Below, piece after piece: positions 1-10,744 of a stretch of 64,000 nucleotides of DNA (the stretch's first letter is position 1; every line of letters begins with the position of its first letter). The position numbers were made by a program, and so were the translations under genes. The stretch is taken from NCBI GenBank assembly GCA_002811645.1, contig PDIP01000030.1, positions 32,514-96,513 of the forward strand, written 5' to 3'. This stretch comes from Corallochytrium limacisporum Hawaii (Eukaryota; Protista; Pluriformea). The notes beneath the pieces are model-generated. The model saw only the letters and a program-made list of their open reading frames with translations, ran no database searches and was not told the origin of the DNA.

Positions 1-994
1 ATAAATTAACCTACAATCAAGATTGAAAAAGATCCTCGGGAGTCAAGTTTTTCGGAGTTTTGACCCTGACATACCAGACAGAGGGTGGTACCACTATCGT
101 CGTGCTCAGGTTGCGTTCTCATGTGTGAGCGCCGTTTGAGTACGTCGTTCAGTCGCCCGGTGCACAGGTCTGCTTGAGAGTGGTGTGTGGTTGGGTCCCA
201 GTATTTGCCCATCCCGACTGCCAGAAAAGAATTTACTGTCACTGCGATTTCAGACTGTACTATGCACTCAAAGAGGCACTGCATGGAACAAAAGTACTGT
301 GAAAATTTTCTTCTCTGCTCACTGCAAAAATCACGCGATTTCAATTGATATAGAACATAACAGCTTCCCTGCGCCCAAGCAAAACATAAGAATGGAATGT
401 AACCCAATATCCTTATCGCCGCACCTCCTGCCCACGCAAGTTTCCGAATCAGGTACAGCAAACCTGCATTGTGAGCGCTCATATCCACACTCTTCCGTGC
501 ACGCAGGCGGTCTAGCGTTCCCTTGAATATGTGATTCCACAGTTCTCCACGCGCACACTATCCAGCCCCGACCGTGCGCTAAATTCTGAAGACCAGTGCG
601 AGTTGCTTGCTTGTCTCCTTTTGGGGGTGTCCGAAACTGCTACACTATGTGCCACTTTTGTATCTCATCAAAGCCCAGTCCGTTTTTTGCATTCGGGGTC
701 CGATCTGTCTTTCCTTTCTCTCCGCCATTTCCATCAGCGTGCTGTCGGTGTACTGGCGATCAGTGTACTGCGGTGTTCTCCATGTCCTGCTCGGTGGGGT
801 TTGTAGCGGTGGCCGGCCTTGGGCCGTGCCTGTGTTCCGTGTCCGTACAAACCGTCGCACCCGTCCCTACGTCCAAAGGAACAAGAAGAAAGACGCCTGG
901 TGCGGGAAGGCAGTGTTCACGGACGGCGGTCAATTTTCTCTGCCTGTTTCGTCTGTTTGTCTGCTTGTCGGTGCGTGGTTCTCGCCCCGCCCCC

Positions 995-1009
995 GGGGGG
1001 GGGGGGGGG
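995..1009 (+). promoter_or_regulatory. poly-G tract (CCCC-G15) ~150 nt upstream of the M20 gene
   Basis: 15 consecutive G preceded by ccccgccccc; similar tracts precede SEH1, UBE2V and the patatin-like gene on their sense strands. Confidence 0.45.
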
Positions 1010-1162
1010 AGTGGGCTGAGAGCGGCTACTTCCAAGAGGACAAAGCCAGCAGACCCCCTGTGCACTGACAACACTGATATAGCGTTCTTCCCGTACAGAA
1101 CGATCTTGTACCACCCCGATTGCTGCGGGCAGCACGTACGTGTGGTATGTTCAGTAGGAACC

Positions 1163-2299
1163 ATGGACATTGACGTTCAGCAGTTCATGGACGAACTAAA
1201 GGAGTTGATTGAGATACCTTCCGCAACCAAGGACGTTGCCGCGTGTGAGAAAACCCTGGACTGGGTTGAGCAATACTTTGGGTCAACAGAGTATACGTAC
1301 TCAAGGCAGCGCGAGTATGATGATGCCAATCCAATCCTCTACGTGAAGCCCAAAAATTGGCGAGGAGATGAGGAAGTTGGTCCTCGGTGTCTGCTCCTTG
1401 TGCACCTGGATGTTGTGCCAATGGAGGCTGGGTACGCCATGAGTGAAAAGGATAACATTCTTTATGGTCGAGGCGTGTCAGATATGAAAGGGCCTGGCCT
1501 AATTCTCATGGACATCATGCGGCGCATGAAGAATCCAGAAATCCATCTTTTGGTCGTAACAGATGAGGAAACGGGTGGTAACATGGGTGCAAAGTGGTGT
1601 TTTGAGACACGAGAAAATGGTGGCCTGGGTTTGACATGTCGAATCTGTATTTGCCCTGATGGAGGTGATGGAGACAATGTAGTCATTGCTGAAAAGGGCG
1701 TATTGCGCGTCAACATCCGCGCCGAGGGCAAATCGGCCCACAGTGCATATCCGTGGCTCGGTGACAACGCAATCGACAAACTTATGGCTGCCTTGCGTCT
1801 GGTGGAAGGGATGTCGGACTTTAATCAGTACTCTGAGGATAACAAATGGTTTACTACGTTGCAGGTTACGAAGATTGCTGGCGGAACGGCCATAAATCAA
1901 GTTCCTGGCAGTGCATCCGCCGATTGCGACATTCGTTATACAGAGCAATGGACGGCCACGAGCCTGCGGGAGCACATCACCACGAAACTGAAGGAAGCAT
2001 TCGGTGATACCATCAAAGTATCGTCCATCTTTGAACAGCCCATGCTCAACATTGACAAGGAGTCGGTCTATGTTAAGATCGGATGCGACGTGATTCGGGA
2101 AATAGTTGGAAAAGAACCCGAACTCCTCAAAGGTAATGGCACTAGTGACGGACACTGGGCCCCGTTCCCGGTGATAATGACGAAACCGACGGGAGGTGGA
2201 TTGCACCAACACTCTGAGTGGGTAGATAAACTGTCGCTGCTGGGCAGCCATAAGGTGTTTGCAGAGATAATCAAACGGTACGTTGCCGTGGAACAATAG
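1163..2299 (+). CDS. M20/M25/M40 family metallohydrolase (DapE/ArgE-like), 378 aa
   Basis: Motifs HLDVVP, YGRGVSDMKG, TDEETGG, PDGG, AEKG, GKSAHSAYPWLGDNAI, GTSDG, GGGLH..SEWV. ATG at 1163 (MDIDVQQF) chosen because the in-frame upstream part of the 596 ORF crosses the poly-G tract and is not protein-like. Confidence 0.9.
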   Translation: MDIDVQQFMDELKELIEIPSATKDVAACEKTLDWVEQYFGSTEYTYSRQREYDDANPILYVKPKNWRGDEEVGPRCLLLVHLDVVPMEAGYAMSEKDNILYGRGVSDMKGPGLILMDIMRRMKNPEIHLLVVTDEETGGNMGAKWCFETRENGGLGLTCRICICPDGGDGDNVVIAEKGVLRVNIRAEGKSAHSAYPWLGDNAIDKLMAALRLVEGMSDFNQYSEDNKWFTTLQVTKIAGGTAINQVPGSASADCDIRYTEQWTATSLREHITTKLKEAFGDTIKVSSIFEQPMLNIDKESVYVKIGCDVIREIVGKEPELLKGNGTSDGHWAPFPVIMTKPTGGGLHQHSEWVDKLSLLGSHKVFAEIIKRYVAVEQ

Positions 2300-2400
2300 A
2301 CGCCGTACCAATCGTACTAAGACAACTAGTTCTTGTATTTCAGTTTTTGGGACTAGTCATTGTCACAAAGAGACATAAAGTGATATTGCAACTCATGGAC

Positions 2401-5400
2401 TCATGAATTGTCCCGTTCTTGCTGTGGCGCGTTCATCTCAGCAAAGAGATGGGACACCTCCTCGGCTGACAAGATAGACAGCAACTGGCCAATTATGTTC
2501 AGTGCAGTGTGCCTCTGGCCTCGTACCGCCTCCACGAGTTCACTCACGCGTTTATCCCTCTCGTGCTCTTCCAGACGGGCAATCAGGCGGCCCTGGCGTG
2601 ACTCCAGCCAGGTAGCAACCATCTTGTTGTCATCCCACATGGGAATAGGCTCCTCCTCAACCATCCTGAACTCCACGACCCACCGTCGCAGAATGACTTC
2701 GGCCTGACGCAGATCCATGCCAGGCGTCTCCGATCGCTGAATCCTTCGTTTGATCTGCAACTCAATGATGGCGCGTCGGAAATGCCAGTAGAAGAAGTGG
2801 CGGGCCTCAGCCCATGGTACTAAAGCAGACACCGCGTTCTTTTCATTCATACGTAGCGCCGTGTCGTGAAGGTCTGCAAAGGCCACTGCAGCCTGGCGAA
2901 TTCCCAGCTCTCGCTCGTGTTCCGGCGCATTGGGAGCAATTGTATCTGCCGTCCGCCTGCGCAGGGCATCGAAGTCGCGCTCCTTGAATTTAATTTGGAT
3001 GGTGTTCTCCGGTTCGAGGATACCACCGCGGCTAGTGGGATCAGCGAAGAGTGAGCTCATCTCCGGATTGATGGCGGGATCAACTACGACCCAGGCACCG
3101 CCCCTGAGATCGCTCTTTGGAGGGATGTACGATGCGACGGGGTTCTTGTAGTCCTTCAGCGCGTTCACAATGTCCACTGAATACTTCAGAACCTCATCAT
3201 ACATATCCCGCGTACCCCCAGCAAAGCCCTTCCAGTTCGCCATAATGAACAGGGGCAGGTTCTCCTTATCAAAATCACGAATGGCCTGGGCCATCTTAGA
3301 CGCTGAGGAGGCAAACAAAATCGATCCACTCATGTGGCTGACAATAACCTCAGAGTCGGGATTCGCAGGATCAGCAGGTAATTTGAACTCCACGGGCCGT
3401 TTTTCTACTGTTATGATAGCCACAGGGATGCCACCGAGGGTAGCACGGCCTACAATCACATTTTGCGCCCACCCGCTCATGATCTCTTGGAATGAGTACT
3501 TGTCGAACACACCAGAAACACGGTCCGCTTCGGGGATCATGGATCCAGGCCCGCTGTAGTCTCCGACGATGAGCTTGCGCGGGTCATACGGAACGTCGTC
3601 CTCCGGGACTTCGAAAGTCACGGGGCGGTTCACGGGGTCCAGCTCCAGATGCACAGGCGGCATCTGAGACGAGGTTAATGGAATATAGCTTAGCCAACGC
3701 AGCGCAGAAATGACAGCTTCGTAGTCATTCTGGGCAACTAGGGAAGTCACTCCGTTGGCTTCCATGATGTGTGTGCCGCCCAGTTGAGCATCGCTTGCGT
3801 AGGCATTGCGACCCAGCATGCGGTTCTGTTCCTTGGCAGCGGTCAGGATTATGTGACTGCCCTCAACCTGGATGACTCGCGATCCTAGACGAGCGAGATA
3901 TGCACCAATACCAATAGAGCGGCAACTGACAATGGTCAACGTAAAGCACTTTTTGTACGCCTCGGCCATGACCGCTGCAATTCGGGCACTGCCATGGAGG
4001 ACCTCGGCACCTAGCTGTTCGCTCTCCTTGCCGTAGATGCTAATGATTTTGTAGCGGTTCTCACCGTTTGCTTCAATAAGTTCCGCACGGACCTGATTCC
4101 GGCTGCTTAGCTGGGAGTAGTCATCTGGTGTGAGATACAGATAATCGATGCCTTCAGCAGGGTTCTGGCTATTGTTCCAACAGACACGGAAGGAGTTCAT
4201 CACATCCCTCGCCAGTCCAACCCTGGCACCACTGTTGGCTGCGAAGTAAATTACAGGTATTTCCCTTTCGATACTATAGTTTACAGCAGCGCGATAGAGC
4301 TCGTCCTCAGTTTCCGTGAAGGTACCGAGCTCGTAGGTTATGTCACTGCAGATGATAACCAGGTCCCGGCCCTGCGGGCAGTACGGCAAGTTCATGTGCA
4401 ATTTCCAGACAACGATGGAGCAGTTATTGGTGCCATGTTCGCGAGCAGTTTCACGCAGTTCCTGGTGATCATCCAGAATCATCTCTGTGGCATCTAGAAC
4501 ATTCATGGGCATGGTCACGGTGGTGTTGACTGGTGGTGCGCCACCGCCGCCCCACTGCTTCTCCAAAACCTTAAGATTTCGGTGGTAGCCGAACCATGTG
4601 TCCCTGACACCCTGACGAAACAGTTCGGGGATATCATACGCATAGGTTGTGCCACGGGATTGAGCCAGGAACCGCTTTGACTGCAAGATACCCTTGGTGT
4701 GGTAAGGTTCGATGGCAGAGTGACCATGTAAGGGGCCCTTCCTGCGACCGAGGCTCTCTAGGTAAATAATGCCTTTCTCCTCATCATACACTTCCTTGTA
4801 GACGTGAATCTCAAGTACATAACCGCTCTCGTTGTTTACAAAGAATCGAACACGCTTCTCCTGATCGTCAGGGCTGTCCCTGACGGACATACAAATTTCA
4901 GCTTTGAGAATACGCAGCTTCCACAGTCTTCGACCGTGGCGGATGATAAGTGCGCGCAGATCGGGCAGAATACTCTCTGGGTCCAGGATGACCGACGGCA
5001 CAAAGTTAAGGAAAAGATGATTGCCGTCCACTGCTGGAAATTCATTTCTGGAGATCGTCAGCTCTATCTCATCCATGGCTTCGACCATCATGCGCTCACC
5101 TTCACTGAAAAAGAATTCAACCGACGTGTTGCTGGAAATCAGATCGGCGTGGCGCACGATGCAACGCGCAAACAGACGACGATCGCGCAAACCTTCCTTA
5201 CTCACACTCTTCCTGCTCTTAGCGTCACCGTAGTATAGATGCAAACGGGGGTTGCTAGTGTTGATGAAGGACAGGTTATAGTTACTCAATCGACTAAGCT
5301 CGAGCTGGAACGCCAGTGCTGGCTCGATGTTCCGATATACCGTATCCTCTGCATAGTCGAGCCAGATGCGGAACGTAAAGTACGCAGGCATCTGCTCGTG

Positions 5401-8400
5401 TTCCAGTACCAAGAAAGTGACACGGCGGATGCCACGGCTCTGCAAAAGGGTTTTCTTGGACCTCACAAAGTCACCCAGGAGCTTTACTTTCTCGAGTTCG
5501 TTCTTCGGTTCCGGGTGGTTCGTCAATTTGACTCGGCGCAGAGCTACCACAATAGAGTTCACAAAGAGTTTTGGATCCAAGGACTCGTAGTCCTCCATTT
5601 CCTCAAAGCAATTGACGGCGCTGTTGAAGTTCACGACCACTTCATCCATAGTATCAAAGGCACAAAGACAGCCCCTGCGCTTGCGGGTGAGAGAAAACAT
5701 GCGGTCACCCTCAGCGGTGTTCCGCCCTCCATCACTGTCTCCGTACTTGGACCATGAACCTCGGCTTGAAGATGTCGAGGAGTTGCGTTTATGGCCCTTG
5801 AAATGACCATCTCTCTCTTTTCTCGATGTTAAATGGACCTCCTTTTCTTTCTTGGGTCCGAGGCGGGCCAACTCCTTCTGCTGGTCACGAATGAAGGGAT
5901 GGGACGGCGGCAGCATGTAGGCCCATTCTACCATCTTGTAGCCCACCTCGGGTGTCAAATGGTGTACACTGTGCAGAGTGTAGGCCGTGTATGCACGTCG
6001 TAAGTAGATCTCCATTGCCACCGTGCATAGCTTGAGATCTTTGTGGTAGAACAAATGACTCAGCACATCGAAGAGGGTTGTGGACTGCTTAACAAGCATT
6101 TCCAATCGGCTGCTACCTTCTTCGCCAAAGGCTTCCATGGCGCCCTTTAGATACATCTCGAGATCCATAAGACGGCGGTCGAAGCTTGGGCTGGAGGCAA
6201 TCAGAATGGCCTGTCGGGCTTTGAGTCCAACCATGGTGGAAGACTTGGAAGACAGATCAGCGAGGCGTTCCAAAAGAATCTTGATGTGTGGACTAAGGTT
6301 ATTAGAGTCGGTGGAAGTGAGAATGTCCAGCAGACGAATGGCGACAAGACTGCGCCATTTACTCTGATGATGTGCCCGAACTATACCAGTGGCGGTCTGG
6401 ATGTTCTCAGAATACTTTTCTCGCAGCAGGGCCATGACATCCTCGTTTGAGCGACTCGTCGAAGAGGTTACAAACCGATTGTGGCTTGAACGTACTTCGG
6501 GAAGGTTGCCGCGCCTTCGCTGGGCCTCGGACCACAGTTCCTCAACCTCTAGGTACTGAGTAAGGTAGGACGAAATTACAATCTTGTGATGTCCCTTCAG
6601 GCCATTACGGTACCGTTGAATAAGCTGAATGATCGGCTCCACGACAATGTAGAAGGCATCGTGCTCTGTCTTTTTCTCAATCTGGCGCGCGTAGCTATCA
6701 ATGCAGTCCGCGATTTGCTGTACCGGGAAGGTACAGAAAACGCTGCGCAAGGAAGCAGCGTAGGATTTGATAATGTCGTTGAGCTTCTTTTGGATGGAAG
6801 GAGCAATGCGACCACCCATAGCACCAACAACAGTCTGTAACTCAAGTAGCGGTAAACGTGGGTCGAGGAGGCACTTGTTCAGATGGTCAAGTGTTTCATC
6901 AATATACTCCTGGTAGACAGCTTCCGGGTACTCATAGCCATCAAAGATGTCCTTGATCGCATTTCGACAGTACTTGTACCTGTTCATTACTTTCTCATCT
7001 TCTCGCAGGGACAGGCTGAGCTCTAAAGGGAACGTTGTTTTGGTCAACACTGTCTCAGGTTGATGACTCTCCTCTTCGTCAAGTTCAATCTGCGCCAGAA
7101 CGTCACCGATGTCCACAACTGTACCCGGTGACCGGTGATGACGAAGAATACCACTGCCTGGAGCCTTCAGTGTGCTCCGCATCCGCATGGCCTCAATTTC
7201 CAGGAAAGGGTCTCCCACTGAGATCCGCTCTCCATCCTCCACCAAGTACCGCACAATCTTGCTCGGCATCTGCGCCCGACAGCATGAGGGATCGATGTCC
7301 CTATTGATCACCATGACCTTACCATCAACAGTGACGTGGACACAGTTTCCTTGCTCCTTGATGTAGCATACGTGACTGGTTTCCTTCATGATCATGAGCA
7401 TACCACCGTCATTTAGCATGTGGTACTGAATCTCAATGAATGAATCATTCAGACCCAAGACCATTCGATCTGCCGCACACTTTGTGACAGTGATGGGATA
7501 CAAGTGATGAATGGGCTCATCGTTCTCGATAATAAGGTTCACAGTTGTGTTCATGCGTAGATATTCCCAGCTGGCCATTTGACCACGTTGCATGCAACTA
7601 CCAAAGTAGTGGCTGCGCATGGTTATTTCCTTTTCGGCCAGGTGTGTGGCAGCTGCCACCAAGGCTAATGTCGGATCAGCCTTCTCTTCAGTTTCGTTCT
7701 TGCGCAGAGACAGAATGGTCTCATCCAGCCAGCCTAGAGTGACATTGTTCTGAATAAATGTCTTTGATTCCAAAAGGCTGCTGATAATCTCAGCAGTGCC
7801 CTGCATACCGTCCCGAGCACCAATTTCCCGCAGGGCTAAGACGAGGTTCCTCCGAGCTCGTTCTCGATTTTCACCCCACACAAAGATGTAGTTTTTGGAC
7901 ATGTCATCGGTGTCATCAAAAGTATTGCCCACAGTCAAGCGAGTGCCTAGCAGATCAAATGGACTCGATTCAGCAAAGCTTGGCAAGACAGACAGATTCT
8001 CTGGCCCTTCCAGAGTCATTCGGCAGAAGATAGCATGGCCATCCGCCCGTGCCTTCCGGAAAGCCTTGGGATCACCTGTACTTGGTTGGAACGGGATCTG
8101 CGACGTGCCCCAAGGGTCGGCATGATAAAGTAGACGAAGCTCCTTCATACGGTGAAGAGGGACACCCATAGCAATCTGCAGCTGCAGAGCTGGGAAGTTG
8201 ACGTGAGAGATCATTTCGTTCGCAGGATGCTCCGCCTGTAGTGCCGGGTGAACCCCTTGGAAATACGCTTTACCATCGCTGACAAGGAATGTGACCGAGC
8301 ACACCCCCTCAAAACGGGCCAGTCGCAATACTTTGCAGGCCATCTTCTCTACCTCATGTCGCAGTCGAACGCTGCGAAAGACTGCTGGGCTTTCTCCGAG

Positions 8401-9672
8401 GACTGTCTGCTGTCGGGATTGTGCACTGATATCTCGAGTGAAAATGCTGGCTACATTGTTGTAGTGGTCACAAGCCATCTGCAGCTCAATGAGCCGTGCA
8501 GCCTCATCATATGTCTCCAGGAACAAGTGACTACCCGGGTAGTCCAGTTCAATCTGATGATACAGCGATGCAAGGGCCTCCCCGTTGTCCACAACCATGT
8601 CGACACCCGGCAAGCAGCTGGGACCCTGTGCAAGGTAAACTCGCACTGGGTACTCGAGCTCTTGCGCCTGCCGCAGAGCGCTCTCTACGTCGCTAACTGC
8701 ACAATTATTGTACTGACTCCGCGATAACCAGTAGGGGTCTGCACGGTTAGTCTTCAAAGCACTGATACCATCGTCCGTATCCAGGCGGTACGGATCCGCA
8801 CTGCTGGGAGAGGTGGAGCCGTATGCACCCAAGAAGTCCACAACATCATTTGGCTTCACACGTGTACTGCTGCCACTCCAGGGCAACATGTCGATTCCCG
8901 CCCCTTGGGCAACCAATCGAGCAGTGATTGCATTCCCCAGAACCGCGAGTGTATGGTAGTGCGGCCCGAGGAAGGCAATCCCACTTTTGTGTAGCATTTC
9001 AGCGAGCTTAGGGTCCTCGCTTCCGTGTCCCCATCCGAGCCACACGGCATCTACATCGTGGTGCTCTGCGATATCAAGGATTACTTCCGCATTGGCGTAC
9101 GACTTCTGTTCTCCGCTGCTACTGGCAATGGGCACGTAGTGGTCTGCCATCTTTAGATGTTCTGAATTGCTGGCTATGTCCTCCGGCGTCGCGACTACCA
9201 CGAACTGCAAAGCTTTCTCTGTCGTAAACATTTCGTAGCTCCATTGTTTCAGCGAACGAATCGCCTTGGCTGCTGCTGTGCTGCTGTTGGCGATGAGGAT
9301 CCGACTCAATGGCCGGCGACCATCGAAGAGTTTCACAAATTCCGCCACAGAAGCCATCTTGGGTCTTTTCGTCTCCTCTTCCGGCAAAACAGCGCCTGCT
9401 TGAATGGAAGTACCTAAAATGCTGGGGTCTGTGTTAAAACTCTGCCTGGTTGATGTCTGCATTTGGCTAAAATTGGAGGTTGTACTCGAGATGAGAGGTG
9501 AGTAGCTGTAGATGGCTGAGCTATCCCGCTTACGCTGCGCTTCATTGGAAGACGGACCAGGTGTATCCACCCACTTCTCATCCTCATCGATCCTGCTGGT
9601 GCCTTGATCTGTAGTGCTCCTGCTGCCCCGGTTCCCGCCCGATGGGATGGCAATGGGCCTTGAGGGCTTCAT
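2401..9672 (-). CDS. ACC: Full-length multidomain acetyl-CoA carboxylase-like protein (BC-BT-BCCP-central-CT), apparently catalytically inactive
   Basis: Uninterrupted ORF, first ATG at 9672. ACC hallmarks throughout: VAEFVKLFDG, WLGWGHGSEDP, ALQLQIAMGVPL, LLDPRLPLLEL, YRNIEPALAFQLELSRL, TTYAYD, ANSGARVGLA, IGIGAYLARLG, PADPANPDS, LRGGAWVVVD, FADLHDT. Biotin motif is EAMRM and BC catalytic motifs are degenerate. Confidence 0.95.
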   Translation of the reverse strand: MKPSRPIAIPSGGNRGSRSTTDQGTSRIDEDEKWVDTPGPSSNEAQRKRDSSAIYSYSPLISSTTSNFSQMQTSTRQSFNTDPSILGTSIQAGAVLPEEETKRPKMASVAEFVKLFDGRRPLSRILIANSSTAAAKAIRSLKQWSYEMFTTEKALQFVVVATPEDIASNSEHLKMADHYVPIASSSGEQKSYANAEVILDIAEHHDVDAVWLGWGHGSEDPKLAEMLHKSGIAFLGPHYHTLAVLGNAITARLVAQGAGIDMLPWSGSSTRVKPNDVVDFLGAYGSTSPSSADPYRLDTDDGISALKTNRADPYWLSRSQYNNCAVSDVESALRQAQELEYPVRVYLAQGPSCLPGVDMVVDNGEALASLYHQIELDYPGSHLFLETYDEAARLIELQMACDHYNNVASIFTRDISAQSRQQTVLGESPAVFRSVRLRHEVEKMACKVLRLARFEGVCSVTFLVSDGKAYFQGVHPALQAEHPANEMISHVNFPALQLQIAMGVPLHRMKELRLLYHADPWGTSQIPFQPSTGDPKAFRKARADGHAIFCRMTLEGPENLSVLPSFAESSPFDLLGTRLTVGNTFDDTDDMSKNYIFVWGENRERARRNLVLALREIGARDGMQGTAEIISSLLESKTFIQNNVTLGWLDETILSLRKNETEEKADPTLALVAAATHLAEKEITMRSHYFGSCMQRGQMASWEYLRMNTTVNLIIENDEPIHHLYPITVTKCAADRMVLGLNDSFIEIQYHMLNDGGMLMIMKETSHVCYIKEQGNCVHVTVDGKVMVINRDIDPSCCRAQMPSKIVRYLVEDGERISVGDPFLEIEAMRMRSTLKAPGSGILRHHRSPGTVVDIGDVLAQIELDEEESHQPETVLTKTTFPLELSLSLREDEKVMNRYKYCRNAIKDIFDGYEYPEAVYQEYIDETLDHLNKCLLDPRLPLLELQTVVGAMGGRIAPSIQKKLNDIIKSYAASLRSVFCTFPVQQIADCIDSYARQIEKKTEHDAFYIVVEPIIQLIQRYRNGLKGHHKIVISSYLTQYLEVEELWSEAQRRRGNLPEVRSSHNRFVTSSTSRSNEDVMALLREKYSENIQTATGIVRAHHQSKWRSLVAIRLLDILTSTDSNNLSPHIKILLERLADLSSKSSTMVGLKARQAILIASSPSFDRRLMDLEMYLKGAMEAFGEEGSSRLEMLVKQSTTLFDVLSHLFYHKDLKLCTVAMEIYLRRAYTAYTLHSVHHLTPEVGYKMVEWAYMLPPSHPFIRDQQKELARLGPKKEKEVHLTSRKERDGHFKGHKRNSSTSSSRGSWSKYGDSDGGRNTAEGDRMFSLTRKRRGCLCAFDTMDEVVVNFNSAVNCFEEMEDYESLDPKLFVNSIVVALRRVKLTNHPEPKNELEKVKLLGDFVRSKKTLLQSRGIRRVTFLVLEHEQMPAYFTFRIWLDYAEDTVYRNIEPALAFQLELSRLSNYNLSFINTSNPRLHLYYGDAKSRKSVSKEGLRDRRLFARCIVRHADLISSNTSVEFFFSEGERMMVEAMDEIELTISRNEFPAVDGNHLFLNFVPSVILDPESILPDLRALIIRHGRRLWKLRILKAEICMSVRDSPDDQEKRVRFFVNNESGYVLEIHVYKEVYDEEKGIIYLESLGRRKGPLHGHSAIEPYHTKGILQSKRFLAQSRGTTYAYDIPELFRQGVRDTWFGYHRNLKVLEKQWGGGGAPPVNTTVTMPMNVLDATEMILDDHQELRETAREHGTNNCSIVVWKLHMNLPYCPQGRDLVIICSDITYELGTFTETEDELYRAAVNYSIEREIPVIYFAANSGARVGLARDVMNSFRVCWNNSQNPAEGIDYLYLTPDDYSQLSSRNQVRAELIEANGENRYKIISIYGKESEQLGAEVLHGSARIAAVMAEAYKKCFTLTIVSCRSIGIGAYLARLGSRVIQVEGSHIILTAAKEQNRMLGRNAYASDAQLGGTHIMEANGVTSLVAQNDYEAVISALRWLSYIPLTSSQMPPVHLELDPVNRPVTFEVPEDDVPYDPRKLIVGDYSGPGSMIPEADRVSGVFDKYSFQEIMSGWAQNVIVGRATLGGIPVAIITVEKRPVEFKLPADPANPDSEVIVSHMSGSILFASSASKMAQAIRDFDKENLPLFIMANWKGFAGGTRDMYDEVLKYSVDIVNALKDYKNPVASYIPPKSDLRGGAWVVVDPAINPEMSSLFADPTSRGGILEPENTIQIKFKERDFDALRRRTADTIAPNAPEHERELGIRQAAVAFADLHDTALRMNEKNAVSALVPWAEARHFFYWHFRRAIIELQIKRRIQRSETPGMDLRQAEVILRRWVVEFRMVEEEPIPMWDDNKMVATWLESRQGRLIARLEEHERDKRVSELVEAVRGQRHTALNIIGQLLSILSAEEVSHLFAEMNAPQQERDNS

Positions 9673-10744
9673 GTCTTCTTTCTTCGTCAATGATTCAGTA
9701 TTTCTGTGGTTTATGGTTCAGATCACATAGTATGTCTTGCGTACATTGATGCCGTAGAGTGTAACTGTTGTTTAGATCCCTACAACCAGTGCTACATGTC
9801 GGCGCAATTACACACTCGTTGGTGCTATGTAGTCTCCACTATGCGCAGCTCCCACTCACGGGCGCTATGGTGAGACCCTCCCCCAAAAATACCCACCCTA
9901 CCAATCCCCCTCAACAACATCCCTCCGCGTTTCACTCCGTCCAGTTACTAGTTCCCCCTTTGTGCGGTCTCGTGGACTGTTCTGGGTTTGCATATTCTTA
10001 TTGTCATGAGTCGGAGCCTCTGAGTTACCGGTGGATCAAAAGGTTGGGAGGGGTATCATGGAGCAACCAACAAACCCAGTCCCCAGAAATCCACACAGGA
10101 GTGCGCAGCAAACAAGAAGACCCGGGTCCCCACCCACACTCTGCTGATGATGCGGTCCAGGGTGGCTGCTGAAGCCACGGCTGTTTCGGAGTCCCCAATT
10201 TTTTTGGCCCGTTTGCATCCGGTGTGTGAGAATCGTCCGAACTGTTGCTTTTGGGGCGCAGTCAGTATTTTAGTTTTGGGGAGCACAGGTCCTCAGCTGC
10301 AAATGACAGCGCACCCTGAAATAAACGAGTGATAGCCAGCGGAGGTGCAAAAAAAATTCTCCAGCAGTGTCGTTTGCGATTGCTCAGCTGCAGTGGTCAA
10401 TGTATTGTAGTTTGATGGGGTGGGAGCAGAGACTACGCCAAATATAGCAAGAACCGGCTGCTGAGTCTCTGAAACCCCCTTGCTCTCTCTGAGTTGTGGT
10501 GTGCGACTGGGCTTAAGTCATCGAATTCAAATGTCAACCCCGTTTGTGGACACAACAGGATTATACGCCGTGCCGGGTAGGCCGACCGACGTCACGGACG
10601 AATTTTGCCGGTTCCGTTCGCTGCATTTCCAGGACACATTTGGCAAGGGTGTTCCGGTGCAATTCATATAGTTTCCTTGCGTTTGCTGATTGAAGAAAGT
10701 TACTTTTGCTACCGTATTTTTTTTTCTCCCTTCAAGTGATATAT

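What the first reader, a model, noticed from the sequence alone, without database searches (positions are those of the whole stretch)
8220..9300. Biotin carboxylase active site of the ACC-like protein is dismantled while the fold is kept
Seen versus recalled canonical motifs: IANNGIAAVK to IANSSTAAAK; GHASENP to GHGSEDP; ATP-binding IKASEGGGGKGIR to RVYLAQGPSCLPGVD; RDCSVQRRHQKIIEE to RDISAQSRQQTVLGE; GTVEYL to CSVTFL; FLELNPRLQVEHP to FQGVHPALQAEHP. These remove the equivalents of E. coli BC K159, the glycine loop, K238, E276, E288, N290 and R292. Flanking structural sequence (LKMADHYVPI, HDVDAVW, PALQLQIAMGVPLHR) is retained. Targeted loss of catalytic residues with a preserved scaffold independently supports the pseudoenzyme call. 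Eukaryotic BC works as a dimer, so a dead BC could activate or poison a partner.
Basis: partly seen in the sequence, partly recalled or inferred. Interest (0 to 1): 0.8.

Follow-up and report, generated by a model that had tools for sequence, protein, structure and literature searches.

The report
Dead biotin carboxylase in spare ACC
A marine single-celled relative of animals (Corallochytrium limacisporum) keeps, beside its working acetyl-CoA carboxylase, a second full-length copy whose ATP-using biotin carboxylase site has been taken apart yet is still preserved by selection, so it is most likely a non-catalytic partner or regulator and not a decaying gene.

Summary
Window 2401-9690 (minus strand) is one intronless 2429-codon ORF with the full eukaryotic ACC architecture. 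Aligned with E. coli AccC and 75 diverse eukaryotic ACCs, it has replaced 12 positions that are invariant in essentially all of them: K116A, K159Y, G164P/G165S/G166C, H209L, K238T, E276T, E288G, N290H, R292A, V295A. The biotinyl lysine is also lost (MKM to MRM). The same genome has a fully canonical ACC on another contig.

This is not neutral decay:
- The frame stays open.
- A second strain differs by 11 synonymous and 2 non-synonymous changes (dN/dS about 0.05).
- Transcript-like contigs cover it.

"Fold kept, catalytic residues targeted" is only partly right. Losses are enriched at catalytic sites (12/17 against 24/70, p=0.012). However, the whole ATP-grasp B+C part has eroded (33-36% identity to canonical ACCs, against 54-60% for the live copy) and a conserved strand is deleted. 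The A subdomain, central region and CT are kept about as well as in the live copy.

No orthologue turned up among 1.84 billion representatives, and I found no paper on it. The partner/regulator mechanism is inferred, not shown. This scan had already flagged the same gene in this window (s1-573239), not other DNA.

The parts
2401..9690 (-). Whole ACC-like ORF. It has 2429 codons from the mechanical TTG start. The first ATG is codon 7, at 9670-9672, which gives the 2423-aa gene model P0001. The stop is at 2401-2403. There are no introns.
9337..9672 (-). N-terminal extension of about 105 residues before the BC core. It is rich in Ser/Thr (29%), and the first 20 residues are basic with no acidic residue.
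8941..9333 (-). BC A subdomain (codons 120-250). It is conserved as well as in the live paralogue (44-53% identity to canonical ACCs). It holds IANSSTAAAK and GHGSEDP. The arginine equivalent to E. coli R19 is kept.
8923..8940 (-). LGNAIT, canonically LGDKI. The equivalent of E. coli K116 is Ala254 here, and the neighbouring Asp is Asn.
8737..8838 (-). Lineage-specific insertion of about 33 residues between the A and B subdomains. It is the low-confidence stretch of the model (model residues 187-214).
8599..8643 (-). Former ATP-binding lysine and glycine-rich loop. IKASEGGGGKGIR has become RVYLAQGPSCLPGVD: K159Y, G164P, G165S, G166C, and one extra residue.
8479..8499 (-). ARLIELQ, canonically ARHLEVQ. 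The H209 equivalent is Leu400.
8392..8436 (-). RDISAQSRQQTVLGE, canonically RDCSVQRRHQKIIEE. The K238 equivalent is Thr429; R234 is Ser and E241 is Gly.
8284..8301 (-). CSVTFL, canonically GTVEYL. The Mg-ligand E276 equivalent is Thr467.
8224..8262 (-). FQGVHPALQAEHP, canonically FLELNPRLQVEHP: E288G, N290H, R292A, V295A. Q294, E296 and H297 are kept.
7927..7953 (-). Site of a 7-residue deletion in the C subdomain that removes the nearly invariant NVWGYFS strand. The following ADSQFGH motif reads DDMSKNY.
7711..8700 (-). BC B+C (ATP-grasp) subdomains, codons 330-660. Identity to canonical ACCs is 33-36%, against 54-60% for the live paralogue. The frame is still open (chance of no stop about 3e-7).
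7180..7194 (-). BCCP motif EAMRM. The biotinyl lysine is replaced by Arg836.
4726..7002 (-). ACC central region (Pfam 550 bits). It is conserved like that of the live paralogue.
2770..4377 (-). Carboxyltransferase domain (Pfam 387 bits). It keeps 67 of 78 highly conserved columns. The losses include R-to-K in WRGF (codon 2154, window 3229-3231) and LTGA to LTAA.

Best explanation
The gene encodes a full-length but non-catalytic paralogue of eukaryotic acetyl-CoA carboxylase, a pseudoenzyme, in Corallochytrium limacisporum.

Shown:
- Its BC domain has lost every residue class needed to bind MgATP and to activate bicarbonate: K116, K159, the glycine loop, H209, K238, E276, E288, N290, R292.
- Its carrier domain has no lysine to take biotin.
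- A canonical ACC exists elsewhere in the genome.
- The dead copy is kept open, is under purifying selection, and is very probably transcribed.

Inferred mechanism:
- The A subdomain, BT, central region and CT are conserved about as well as in the live enzyme, while only the ATP-grasp core and the biotin site have been released from constraint. What is selected is therefore the ACC-shaped scaffold and its CT / acyl-CoA-binding half.
- The most likely role is to assemble with the live ACC, chiefly through the head-to-tail CT dimer and the central region. The resulting hybrid oligomers would have at most one working BC/BCCP arm.
- Eukaryotic BC is active only as a dimer, so such hybrids should have lowered or altered activity. 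The protein would then act as a built-in, probably negative, regulator of malonyl-CoA production, in the way plant BADC proteins act on heteromeric ACCase.

I put about 0.9 on 'catalytically dead BC kept by selection' and about 0.4 on the hetero-oligomer/regulator mechanism. The confidence given is for the whole statement.
For: - Full ACC domain order, with BC scores depressed (CPSase_L_D2 70 bits, Biotin_carb_C 22.8 bits, below its 32.4 cut-off) while ACC_central scores 550 and Carboxyl_trans 387 bits.
- Residue-by-residue loss of 12 invariant catalytic positions against E. coli AccC and 75 eukaryotic ACCs.
- A canonical second ACC in the same genome, with all motifs; it is identified as Clim_evm41s144.
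- The chance of an open frame is 8.5e-49 for the ORF and 2.8e-7 for the eroded B+C part.
- A second strain's contig shows 13 in-ORF differences, 11 of them synonymous (expected synonymous share 0.23; P=3.9e-6; dN/dS about 0.05). None touches the dead motifs.
- Contigs of transcriptome-like runs cover the gene. One of them ends 26 bases beyond the first codon of the open frame (44 bases upstream of the ATG). Short contigs occur in a library labelled metatranscriptomic RNA-Seq.
- The domain-wise identity pattern and the retention of conserved columns: BC 56%, CT 86%, live copy 97-100%.
- BC dimerisation is required for the activity of eukaryotic ACC (PMC5126230).
- BADC proteins are biotin-less BCCP homologues that inhibit ACCase (bioRxiv 10.1101/634550).
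Against: - No interaction data exist, and no multimer model could be run.
- The BC C-subdomain strand that is deleted lies, by my recollection of the E. coli BC dimer, next to interface residues. A canonical BC-BC heterodimer is therefore doubtful.
- CT itself has changes at active-site-proximal conserved positions (R-to-K in WRGF, LTGA to LTAA). It may not be a normal CT partner either.
- No orthologue is known in any other organism. Conservation across species therefore cannot be used, and the selection evidence rests on one strain pair plus frame integrity.
- The RNA nature of runs X1 and X4 is the tool's guess.
Confidence: 0.5

Rival explanations
1. It is a stand-alone acyl-CoA-binding protein. 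The well-kept CT half binds acetyl-, malonyl- or another acyl-CoA without turnover and reports or buffers its level, as the pseudoenzyme CPT1C senses malonyl-CoA. Alternatively it scaffolds another process, independently of the live ACC.
For: CT is the best-kept catalytic domain: 67/78 conserved columns and 43-54% identity. The RLG(S/Q)R and LRGG motifs are intact. CPT1C is a precedent for a malonyl-CoA-sensing pseudoenzyme (PMC6927751, listed). The long Ser/Thr-rich N-terminal extension could carry its own regulation or targeting.
Against: A sensor would not need the BC A subdomain, BT and the 760-residue central region to be kept as tightly as in the live enzyme. Nothing here points to a downstream partner.
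Confidence: 0.25
2. It is half an enzyme working in trans. The protein still performs the carboxyltransferase half-reaction, or malonyl-CoA decarboxylation/exchange, using carboxybiotin delivered by the BCCP of the live ACC or of another biotin enzyme.
For: CT conservation. The genome holds five other BC-bearing genes that could supply carboxybiotin. In ACC dimers the CT sites are built from both protomers (PMC6269866).
Against: The arginine of WRGF is Lys here; I map it from memory to yeast Arg1954, which PMC6269866 names as important for recognising the carboxyl group of malonyl-CoA. The LTGA and VWYPNSA-type motifs are also altered. No precedent is known to me for trans-delivery between separate homomeric ACC chains outside a dimer.
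Confidence: 0.15
3. It is a pseudogene in neutral decay after duplication. The changes are spread without regard to function, and the open frame is an accident of youth.
For: The BC B+C region has lost many non-catalytic conserved residues as well: 24 of 70. There is one deletion and one insertion. No orthologue is known.
Against: The copy is only 30-46% identical per domain to its paralogue, so the divergence is old. Yet 2429 codons remain open (P about 1e-48) and all indels are in frame. The strain comparison gives 11 synonymous to 2 non-synonymous changes. The central region and CT evolve no faster than in the live copy. Transcript-like contigs exist.
Confidence: 0.03
4. It is an assembly or gene-model artefact, or a still-active enzyme with an unorthodox ATP site.
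For: None beyond the general possibility.
Against: An identical sequence occurs in an independent run (X1, 0 differences) and a near-identical one in a second strain (X4) and in marine metagenome and metatranscriptome contigs. To my knowledge, single substitutions at K116, K159, K238, E276, E288, N290 or R292 cripple E. coli BC, and here all are changed together.
Confidence: 0.02

Closest known systems
Eukaryotic homomeric (multidomain) acetyl-CoA carboxylase, e.g. human ACC1, yeast Acc1, and the organism's own Clim_evm41s144
   Same: It has the same BC-BT-BCCP-central-CT order and the same length class. It is 37-39% identical overall to holozoan ACCs. It sits inside the clade with Capsaspora, Chromosphaera and animal ACCs in trees. 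The model of its BC superposes on human ACC1 BC with TM 0.91, normalised to the target.
   Different: Twelve invariant BC catalytic positions and the biotinyl lysine are replaced. The B+C subdomains are eroded, and there is a strand deletion. None of the 75 other eukaryotic ACC representatives inspected shows any of these losses.
Plant BADC proteins (biotin attachment domain-containing; inhibitors of heteromeric ACCase)
   Same: They are homologues of an ACC component that lack the biotinyl lysine, are catalytically inert, and are retained. They act by taking the place of the functional component.
   Different: BADCs are small BCCP-only proteins of the plastid heteromeric enzyme. This is a 270-kDa single chain with all domains, and it arose independently in a holozoan. 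Its inhibitory action is not shown.
CPT1C, a malonyl-CoA-sensing pseudoenzyme of lipid metabolism
   Same: It is an enzyme paralogue that keeps the acyl-CoA/malonyl-CoA-binding fold while having little or no catalysis (papers listed).
   Different: It belongs to an unrelated protein family. The similarity is one of logic only.
Yeast Hfa1, the mitochondrial ACC paralogue (recalled, not tested here)
   Same: It is a second full-length ACC copy with an N-terminal extension, specialised after duplication.
   Different: To my knowledge Hfa1 is catalytically active and keeps the BC motifs and the biotinyl lysine.

Membership tests
Eukaryotic multidomain acetyl-CoA carboxylase (as an enzyme, EC 6.4.1.2) | Domain order BC - BT - BCCP - central - CT in one chain | tested here: met
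   Pfam matches for all of these domains, in this order.
Eukaryotic multidomain acetyl-CoA carboxylase (as an enzyme, EC 6.4.1.2) | ATP-grasp catalytic set of BC (E. coli K116, K159, Gly loop, H209, K238, E276, E288, N290, R292, E296, R338) | tested here: not met
   Nine of the eleven classes are replaced; only E296 and R338 are kept.
Eukaryotic multidomain acetyl-CoA carboxylase (as an enzyme, EC 6.4.1.2) | Biotinyl lysine in the (A/V)MKM motif of BCCP | tested here: not met
   The motif reads EAMRM. The column is K in at least 95% of the 75 representatives.
Eukaryotic multidomain acetyl-CoA carboxylase (as an enzyme, EC 6.4.1.2) | Intact carboxyltransferase active site | tested here: inconclusive
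   67/78 conserved columns are kept, and the RLGSR and LRGG motifs are intact. However, WRGF reads WKGF and LTGA reads LTAA.
Eukaryotic multidomain acetyl-CoA carboxylase (by descent) | Branches within eukaryotic ACCs | tested here: met
   It is sister to the Chromosphaera ACC, inside a clade with Capsaspora and animals (SH-aLRT 95-98). A clade with the own canonical copy is not rejected (AU p=0.062).
Pseudoenzyme (inactive homologue kept by selection) | Loss of residues essential for catalysis | tested here: met
Pseudoenzyme (inactive homologue kept by selection) | Evidence of purifying selection and expression | tested here: met
   Open frame. 11 synonymous against 2 non-synonymous differences between strains. 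Transcript-like contigs, with the RNA nature partly a guess by the tool.
Pseudoenzyme (inactive homologue kept by selection) | Measured absence of activity | not testable with these tools
   Needs an ATPase/carboxylase assay and a biotin blot.
BADC-like negative regulator of ACC | Biotin-less homologue of an ACC component | tested here: met
   K-to-R in the BCCP motif.
BADC-like negative regulator of ACC | Binds the active enzyme and lowers its activity | not testable with these tools
   No interaction or activity data. Only a functional analogy, not common descent with BADC.

The most novel reading that the evidence does not exclude
A holozoan has independently evolved, from a complete single-chain ACC, a dedicated dead protomer that co-assembles with the live enzyme and sets malonyl-CoA output. 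This would be a 270-kDa counterpart of plant BADC and the first pseudoenzyme of the homomeric ACC class. A further twist that the trees allow but do not prove: the dead copy may be the vertical counterpart of the ichthyosporean/animal ACC, while catalysis was taken over by a more divergent paralogue.
Probability: 0.3. Interest if true: 0.7.

Novelty: new variant of a known kind. Interest (0 to 1): 0.55.

Why it matters
Eukaryotic ACC is the committed step of fatty-acid synthesis and a drug and herbicide target. Its activity depends on BC dimerisation and large domain movements.

A natural full-length protomer whose ATP site and biotin site are both abolished, but whose scaffold and CT half are kept under selection, is a ready-made probe. 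It can show how far the two protomers of an ACC dimer depend on each other. It can also show whether cells regulate homomeric ACC by mixing live and dead subunits, as plants do for the heteromeric enzyme with BADC.

It also adds a very large metabolic enzyme to the list of pseudoenzymes, in a lineage used to reconstruct the unicellular ancestry of animals. Its reach is limited: so far it is known from a single species.

Tried and rejected
- AlphaFold2 on the single BC sequence gave an unusable model (pLDDT 36.6). Only the run with 52 homologues was confident, so the model cannot count as independent proof that the fold is kept.
- The first full-length MAFFT run timed out and was redone with a faster setting.
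- Search for an orthologue of the dead copy:
  - The word search found nothing closer than 39% identity.
  - The exhaustive representative search found nothing closer than 40% over a comparable length.
  - Short fragments at 53-54% identity (P0240, P0265) carry canonical IANNG/GHASENP/LGDKI and so are ordinary ACC pieces.
  - A crude regex scan for motif loss flagged many long proteins. The alignment shows these are spelling variants or truncated models, not dead enzymes.
- Origin of the duplication. The trees place the dead copy with the Chromosphaera ACC and the live copy outside. The AU test does not reject the two being sisters (p=0.062), so I make no claim about which copy is ancestral.
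- Literature searches for an ACC pseudoenzyme, for Corallochytrium ACC and for inactive ACC paralogues found nothing relevant.
- I could not confirm from the held papers that the deleted strand belongs to the BC dimer/soraphen interface. That point rests on memory.
- The language-model atlas search only returned ordinary BC families. An earlier call (64) failed on a length limit and was corrected.
Full report
**What is there.** The finding lies inside one long open reading frame on the minus strand, window 2401-9690. It has 2429 codons without a stop. The first ATG is at codon 7, which gives the 2423-residue model P0001 of the protein collection. Pfam finds the complete single-chain acetyl-CoA carboxylase (ACC) architecture in the usual order:
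- Biotin_carb_N: 87 bits
- CPSase_L_D2: 70.6 bits
- Biotin_carb_C: 22.8 bits, below its 32.4 cut-off
- the BT domain
- Biotin_lipoyl
- ACC_central: 550 bits
- Carboxyl_trans: 387 bits

The biotin carboxylase (BC) part is thus recognisable but scores far below the rest.

**Organism and second copy.** The genome is 24.1 Mb in 286 contigs. The second ACC of this genome is identical to the EukProt entry Clim_evm41s144, so the organism is Corallochytrium limacisporum, a unicellular relative of animals. That second ACC (contig C173, L004:301-7932, 2543 codons) carries every canonical motif: IANNGNAAVK, GHASENP, IKASEGGGGKGIR, RDCSVQRRHQKIIEE, GTVEFL, FLELNPRLQVEHP and EVMKM.

**Check of the observation.**
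- For residue numbers that do not rest on memory, I took E. coli accC from the annotated K-12 record (L005:3918-5267). I aligned it with the dead copy, the genome's own canonical copy and 74 further eukaryotic ACCs of at least 1900 residues. Most of these are representatives of 50%-identity clusters.
- The dead copy reads K116A (codon 254), K159Y (352), G164P/G165S/G166C (357-359), H209L (400), K238T (429), E276T (467), E288G (479), N290H (481), R292A (483) and V295A (486).
- All of these are invariant in 75 of 75 canonical sequences (K238 in 74 of 75).
- Kept are Q233, Q294, E296, H297, R338 and D382.
- So the phosphate-binding lysines, the glycine-rich lid, all three Mg ligands and the bicarbonate arginine are gone.
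- From established mutational work on E. coli BC (recalled, not re-read here), single changes at most of these positions reduce activity by orders of magnitude.
- In the carrier domain the biotinyl lysine is Arg836, in EAMRM.

**Targeted loss or even decay?** Three measurements bear on this.
- *Retention of conserved columns, by domain.* Of the columns conserved in at least 95% of the 75 canonical ACCs, the dead copy keeps 44 of 78 in BC and 67 of 78 in CT. The live paralogue keeps 78 of 78 and 76 of 78.
- *Catalytic against other conserved columns.* In the BC-to-BCCP alignment, 12 of 17 conserved positions named beforehand as catalytic are lost, against 24 of 70 other conserved positions (Fisher p=0.012). 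Many of the 'other' losses sit next to catalytic residues: D115, A160, R170, R234, E241, T274, L287.
- *Identity to five canonical references, by part*:

| Part | Dead copy | Live copy |
|---|---|---|
| BC A subdomain | 44-53% | 47-53% |
| BC B+C subdomains | 33-36% | 54-60% |
| BT | 26-34% | 27-34% |
| Central region | 26-40% | 26-37% |
| CT | 43-54% | 54-58% |

The release of constraint is therefore local. It affects the ATP-grasp core and the biotin site, and not the protein as a whole.

It is, however, broader than a surgical removal of catalytic side chains:
- A nearly invariant strand of the C subdomain (NVWGYFS) is deleted, and the following ADSQFGH motif is unrecognisable.
- About 33 residues are inserted between the A and B subdomains.
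- The former glycine loop has an extra residue.

**Is the fold kept?**
- AlphaFold2 on the sequence alone failed (pLDDT 36.6).
- With 52 homologues the model is confident (pLDDT 84.2, pTM 0.87). Confidence is low at the insertion, at the former glycine loop and around the deletion.
- The model superposes on the human ACC1 BC domain with TM 0.91, normalised to the target.
- Because the alignment consists of canonical enzymes, this shows compatibility with the BC fold, not independent proof.
- 'Fold kept' is safe for the A subdomain and plausible for most of the core. It is doubtful for part of the C subdomain.

**Is the gene alive?**
- The chance of no stop codon, at this base composition, is 8.5e-49 for the ORF and 2.8e-7 for the eroded B+C part alone. 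All indels are in frame.
- Public runs of the same organism hold the gene.
- One run has a 6942-base contig identical to the window. It ends 26 bases beyond the first codon of the open frame, 44 bases upstream of the ATG.
- A run from another sample and study has an 8751-base contig with 14 differences. Thirteen of these are in the ORF, and 11 of the 13 are synonymous. Only 23% of sites are synonymous (P=3.9e-6; still 3.5e-4 if 35% is assumed). This gives dN/dS of about 0.05.
- In the BC span alone, with one further variant from a marine metagenome, the count is 5 synonymous to 2 non-synonymous. This is weaker but in the same direction.
- None of the differences touches a dead motif.
- These two runs total about 13 Mb in 10-17 thousand short records, which looks like transcriptome assemblies. 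Their RNA nature is nevertheless the tool's guess.
- A library labelled metatranscriptomic RNA-Seq from sea water also holds contigs of 207 and 266 bases at 98-99.6% identity.

**Relatives and origin.**
- The word-based search found no protein closer than 39% identity. The best hit is the canonical ACC of Chromosphaera perkinsii (Nk52), followed by vertebrate ACC1.
- The exhaustive search of 1.84 billion representatives with the BC-to-BCCP region found nothing closer than 40% over comparable length.
- The few short hits at 53-54% identity carry canonical motifs.
- None of the 75 long eukaryotic ACCs inspected has lost any of the catalytic positions. The dead copy has no known orthologue.
- In trees built without the BC columns it groups with the Chromosphaera ACC (SH-aLRT 95 and 97), inside a clade with Capsaspora and animals. 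The live copy branches just outside.
- The AU test does not reject the two Corallochytrium copies being sisters (p=0.062). Both have long branches, so I leave open which copy is the older lineage.

**How it most likely works.**
- Shown: the protein cannot carry out the first half-reaction and cannot carry biotin, yet its ACC-shaped scaffold and CT half are under selection.
- Inferred, context: in eukaryotic ACC the CT domains form the head-to-tail dimer whose active sites lie at the interface of the N- and C-domains in that dimer (PMC6269866). The BC domains are active only when they pair (PMC5126230).
- Inferred, reading: the simplest reading is that the dead chain joins the live chain in hybrid oligomers and thereby tunes, probably lowers, malonyl-CoA synthesis. 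This is the logic of plant BADC proteins, biotin-less BCCP homologues that inhibit heteromeric ACCase (10.1101/634550).
The arginine equivalent to E. coli R19, a BC dimer-interface position (PMC5059739), is kept. The deleted strand, however, aligns with E. coli residues 364-370, next to F363 and R366, which I recall (not verified here) as interface residues.
- Rivals are a stand-alone acyl-CoA sensor in the manner of CPT1C, or a CT half-enzyme served in trans.
- CT itself shows a few changes at conserved positions near the active site: WRGF to WKGF, and LTGA to LTAA. PMC6269866 names yeast Arg1954 as important for recognising the carboxyl group of malonyl-CoA. I equate that arginine with the R of WRGF from memory.

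**Comparison and novelty.** By descent this is a eukaryotic multidomain ACC. As an enzyme it fails two defining tests, the BC catalytic set and the biotinyl lysine, so it should be filed as an ACC-derived pseudoenzyme. I found no paper describing a dead homomeric ACC or discussing ACC in Corallochytrium. An earlier follow-up in this scan (s1-573239) reached the same overall reading from the lysine-to-arginine change in this same gene. I re-derived its claims here from independent analyses.

**Added by this report:**
- the full residue map against E. coli AccC
- the subdomain-resolved pattern of erosion
- the strand deletion
- the strain-based selection test
- the caveat about BC dimerisation

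**Verdict.** Observation confirmed. Interpretation partly supported. It is a new variant of a known kind (a pseudoenzyme paralogue used as a probable regulator), known so far from one species.

Noticed in passing
G000:C88:239929-242259 (own genome, not in the window): A single open frame of 1147 residues on the minus strand matches both Biotin_carb_C (70 bits) and Carboxyl_trans (301 bits). It looks like a compact single-chain acyl-CoA carboxylase, distinct from the two ACCs and from the separate PCC/MCC-type subunits.
   Followed up: no
L004:301-7932 (-), about residues 200-265 of the canonical ACC: The live ACC of this organism carries an insertion of about 60 residues, very acidic and Ser/Asp/Glu-rich, in the BC A subdomain just after GHASENP. 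It is absent from the 52 other ACCs aligned.
   Followed up: no
window 9337-9672 (-): The dead copy has an N-terminal extension of about 105 residues, 29% Ser/Thr. Its first 20 residues are basic and free of acidic residues. It could be a targeting or regulatory segment; no predictor was available.
   Followed up: partly
window 3229-3231 and 3829-3840 (-): Inside the otherwise well-kept CT domain, the arginine of WRGF is lysine (R in 72 of 75 ACCs; I recall it as yeast Arg1954). The LTGAxAL motif reads LTAAKEQ.
   Followed up: partly
window 1079-9829: The second strain's transcript-like contig (run X4) runs from inside the convergent neighbour (the M20 hydrolase ORF at 596-2299, plus strand) through the whole ACC-like gene. 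The 3' ends of the two genes may therefore overlap or lie within about 100 bases of each other.
   Followed up: no
window 6077-6283, 8199-8349, 8529-8679, 8762-9025: Marine metagenome and metatranscriptome runs hold short contigs 98-99.6% identical to this gene. The organism, or a very close strain, is therefore present in open environmental samples.
   Followed up: partly
trees: The ACC of the amoebozoan Rhizamoeba saxonica (P0139) falls inside the clade otherwise made of holozoan ACCs. Three unnamed environmental ACCs (P0154, P0187, P0231) form a tight group near the holozoan clade.
   Followed up: no
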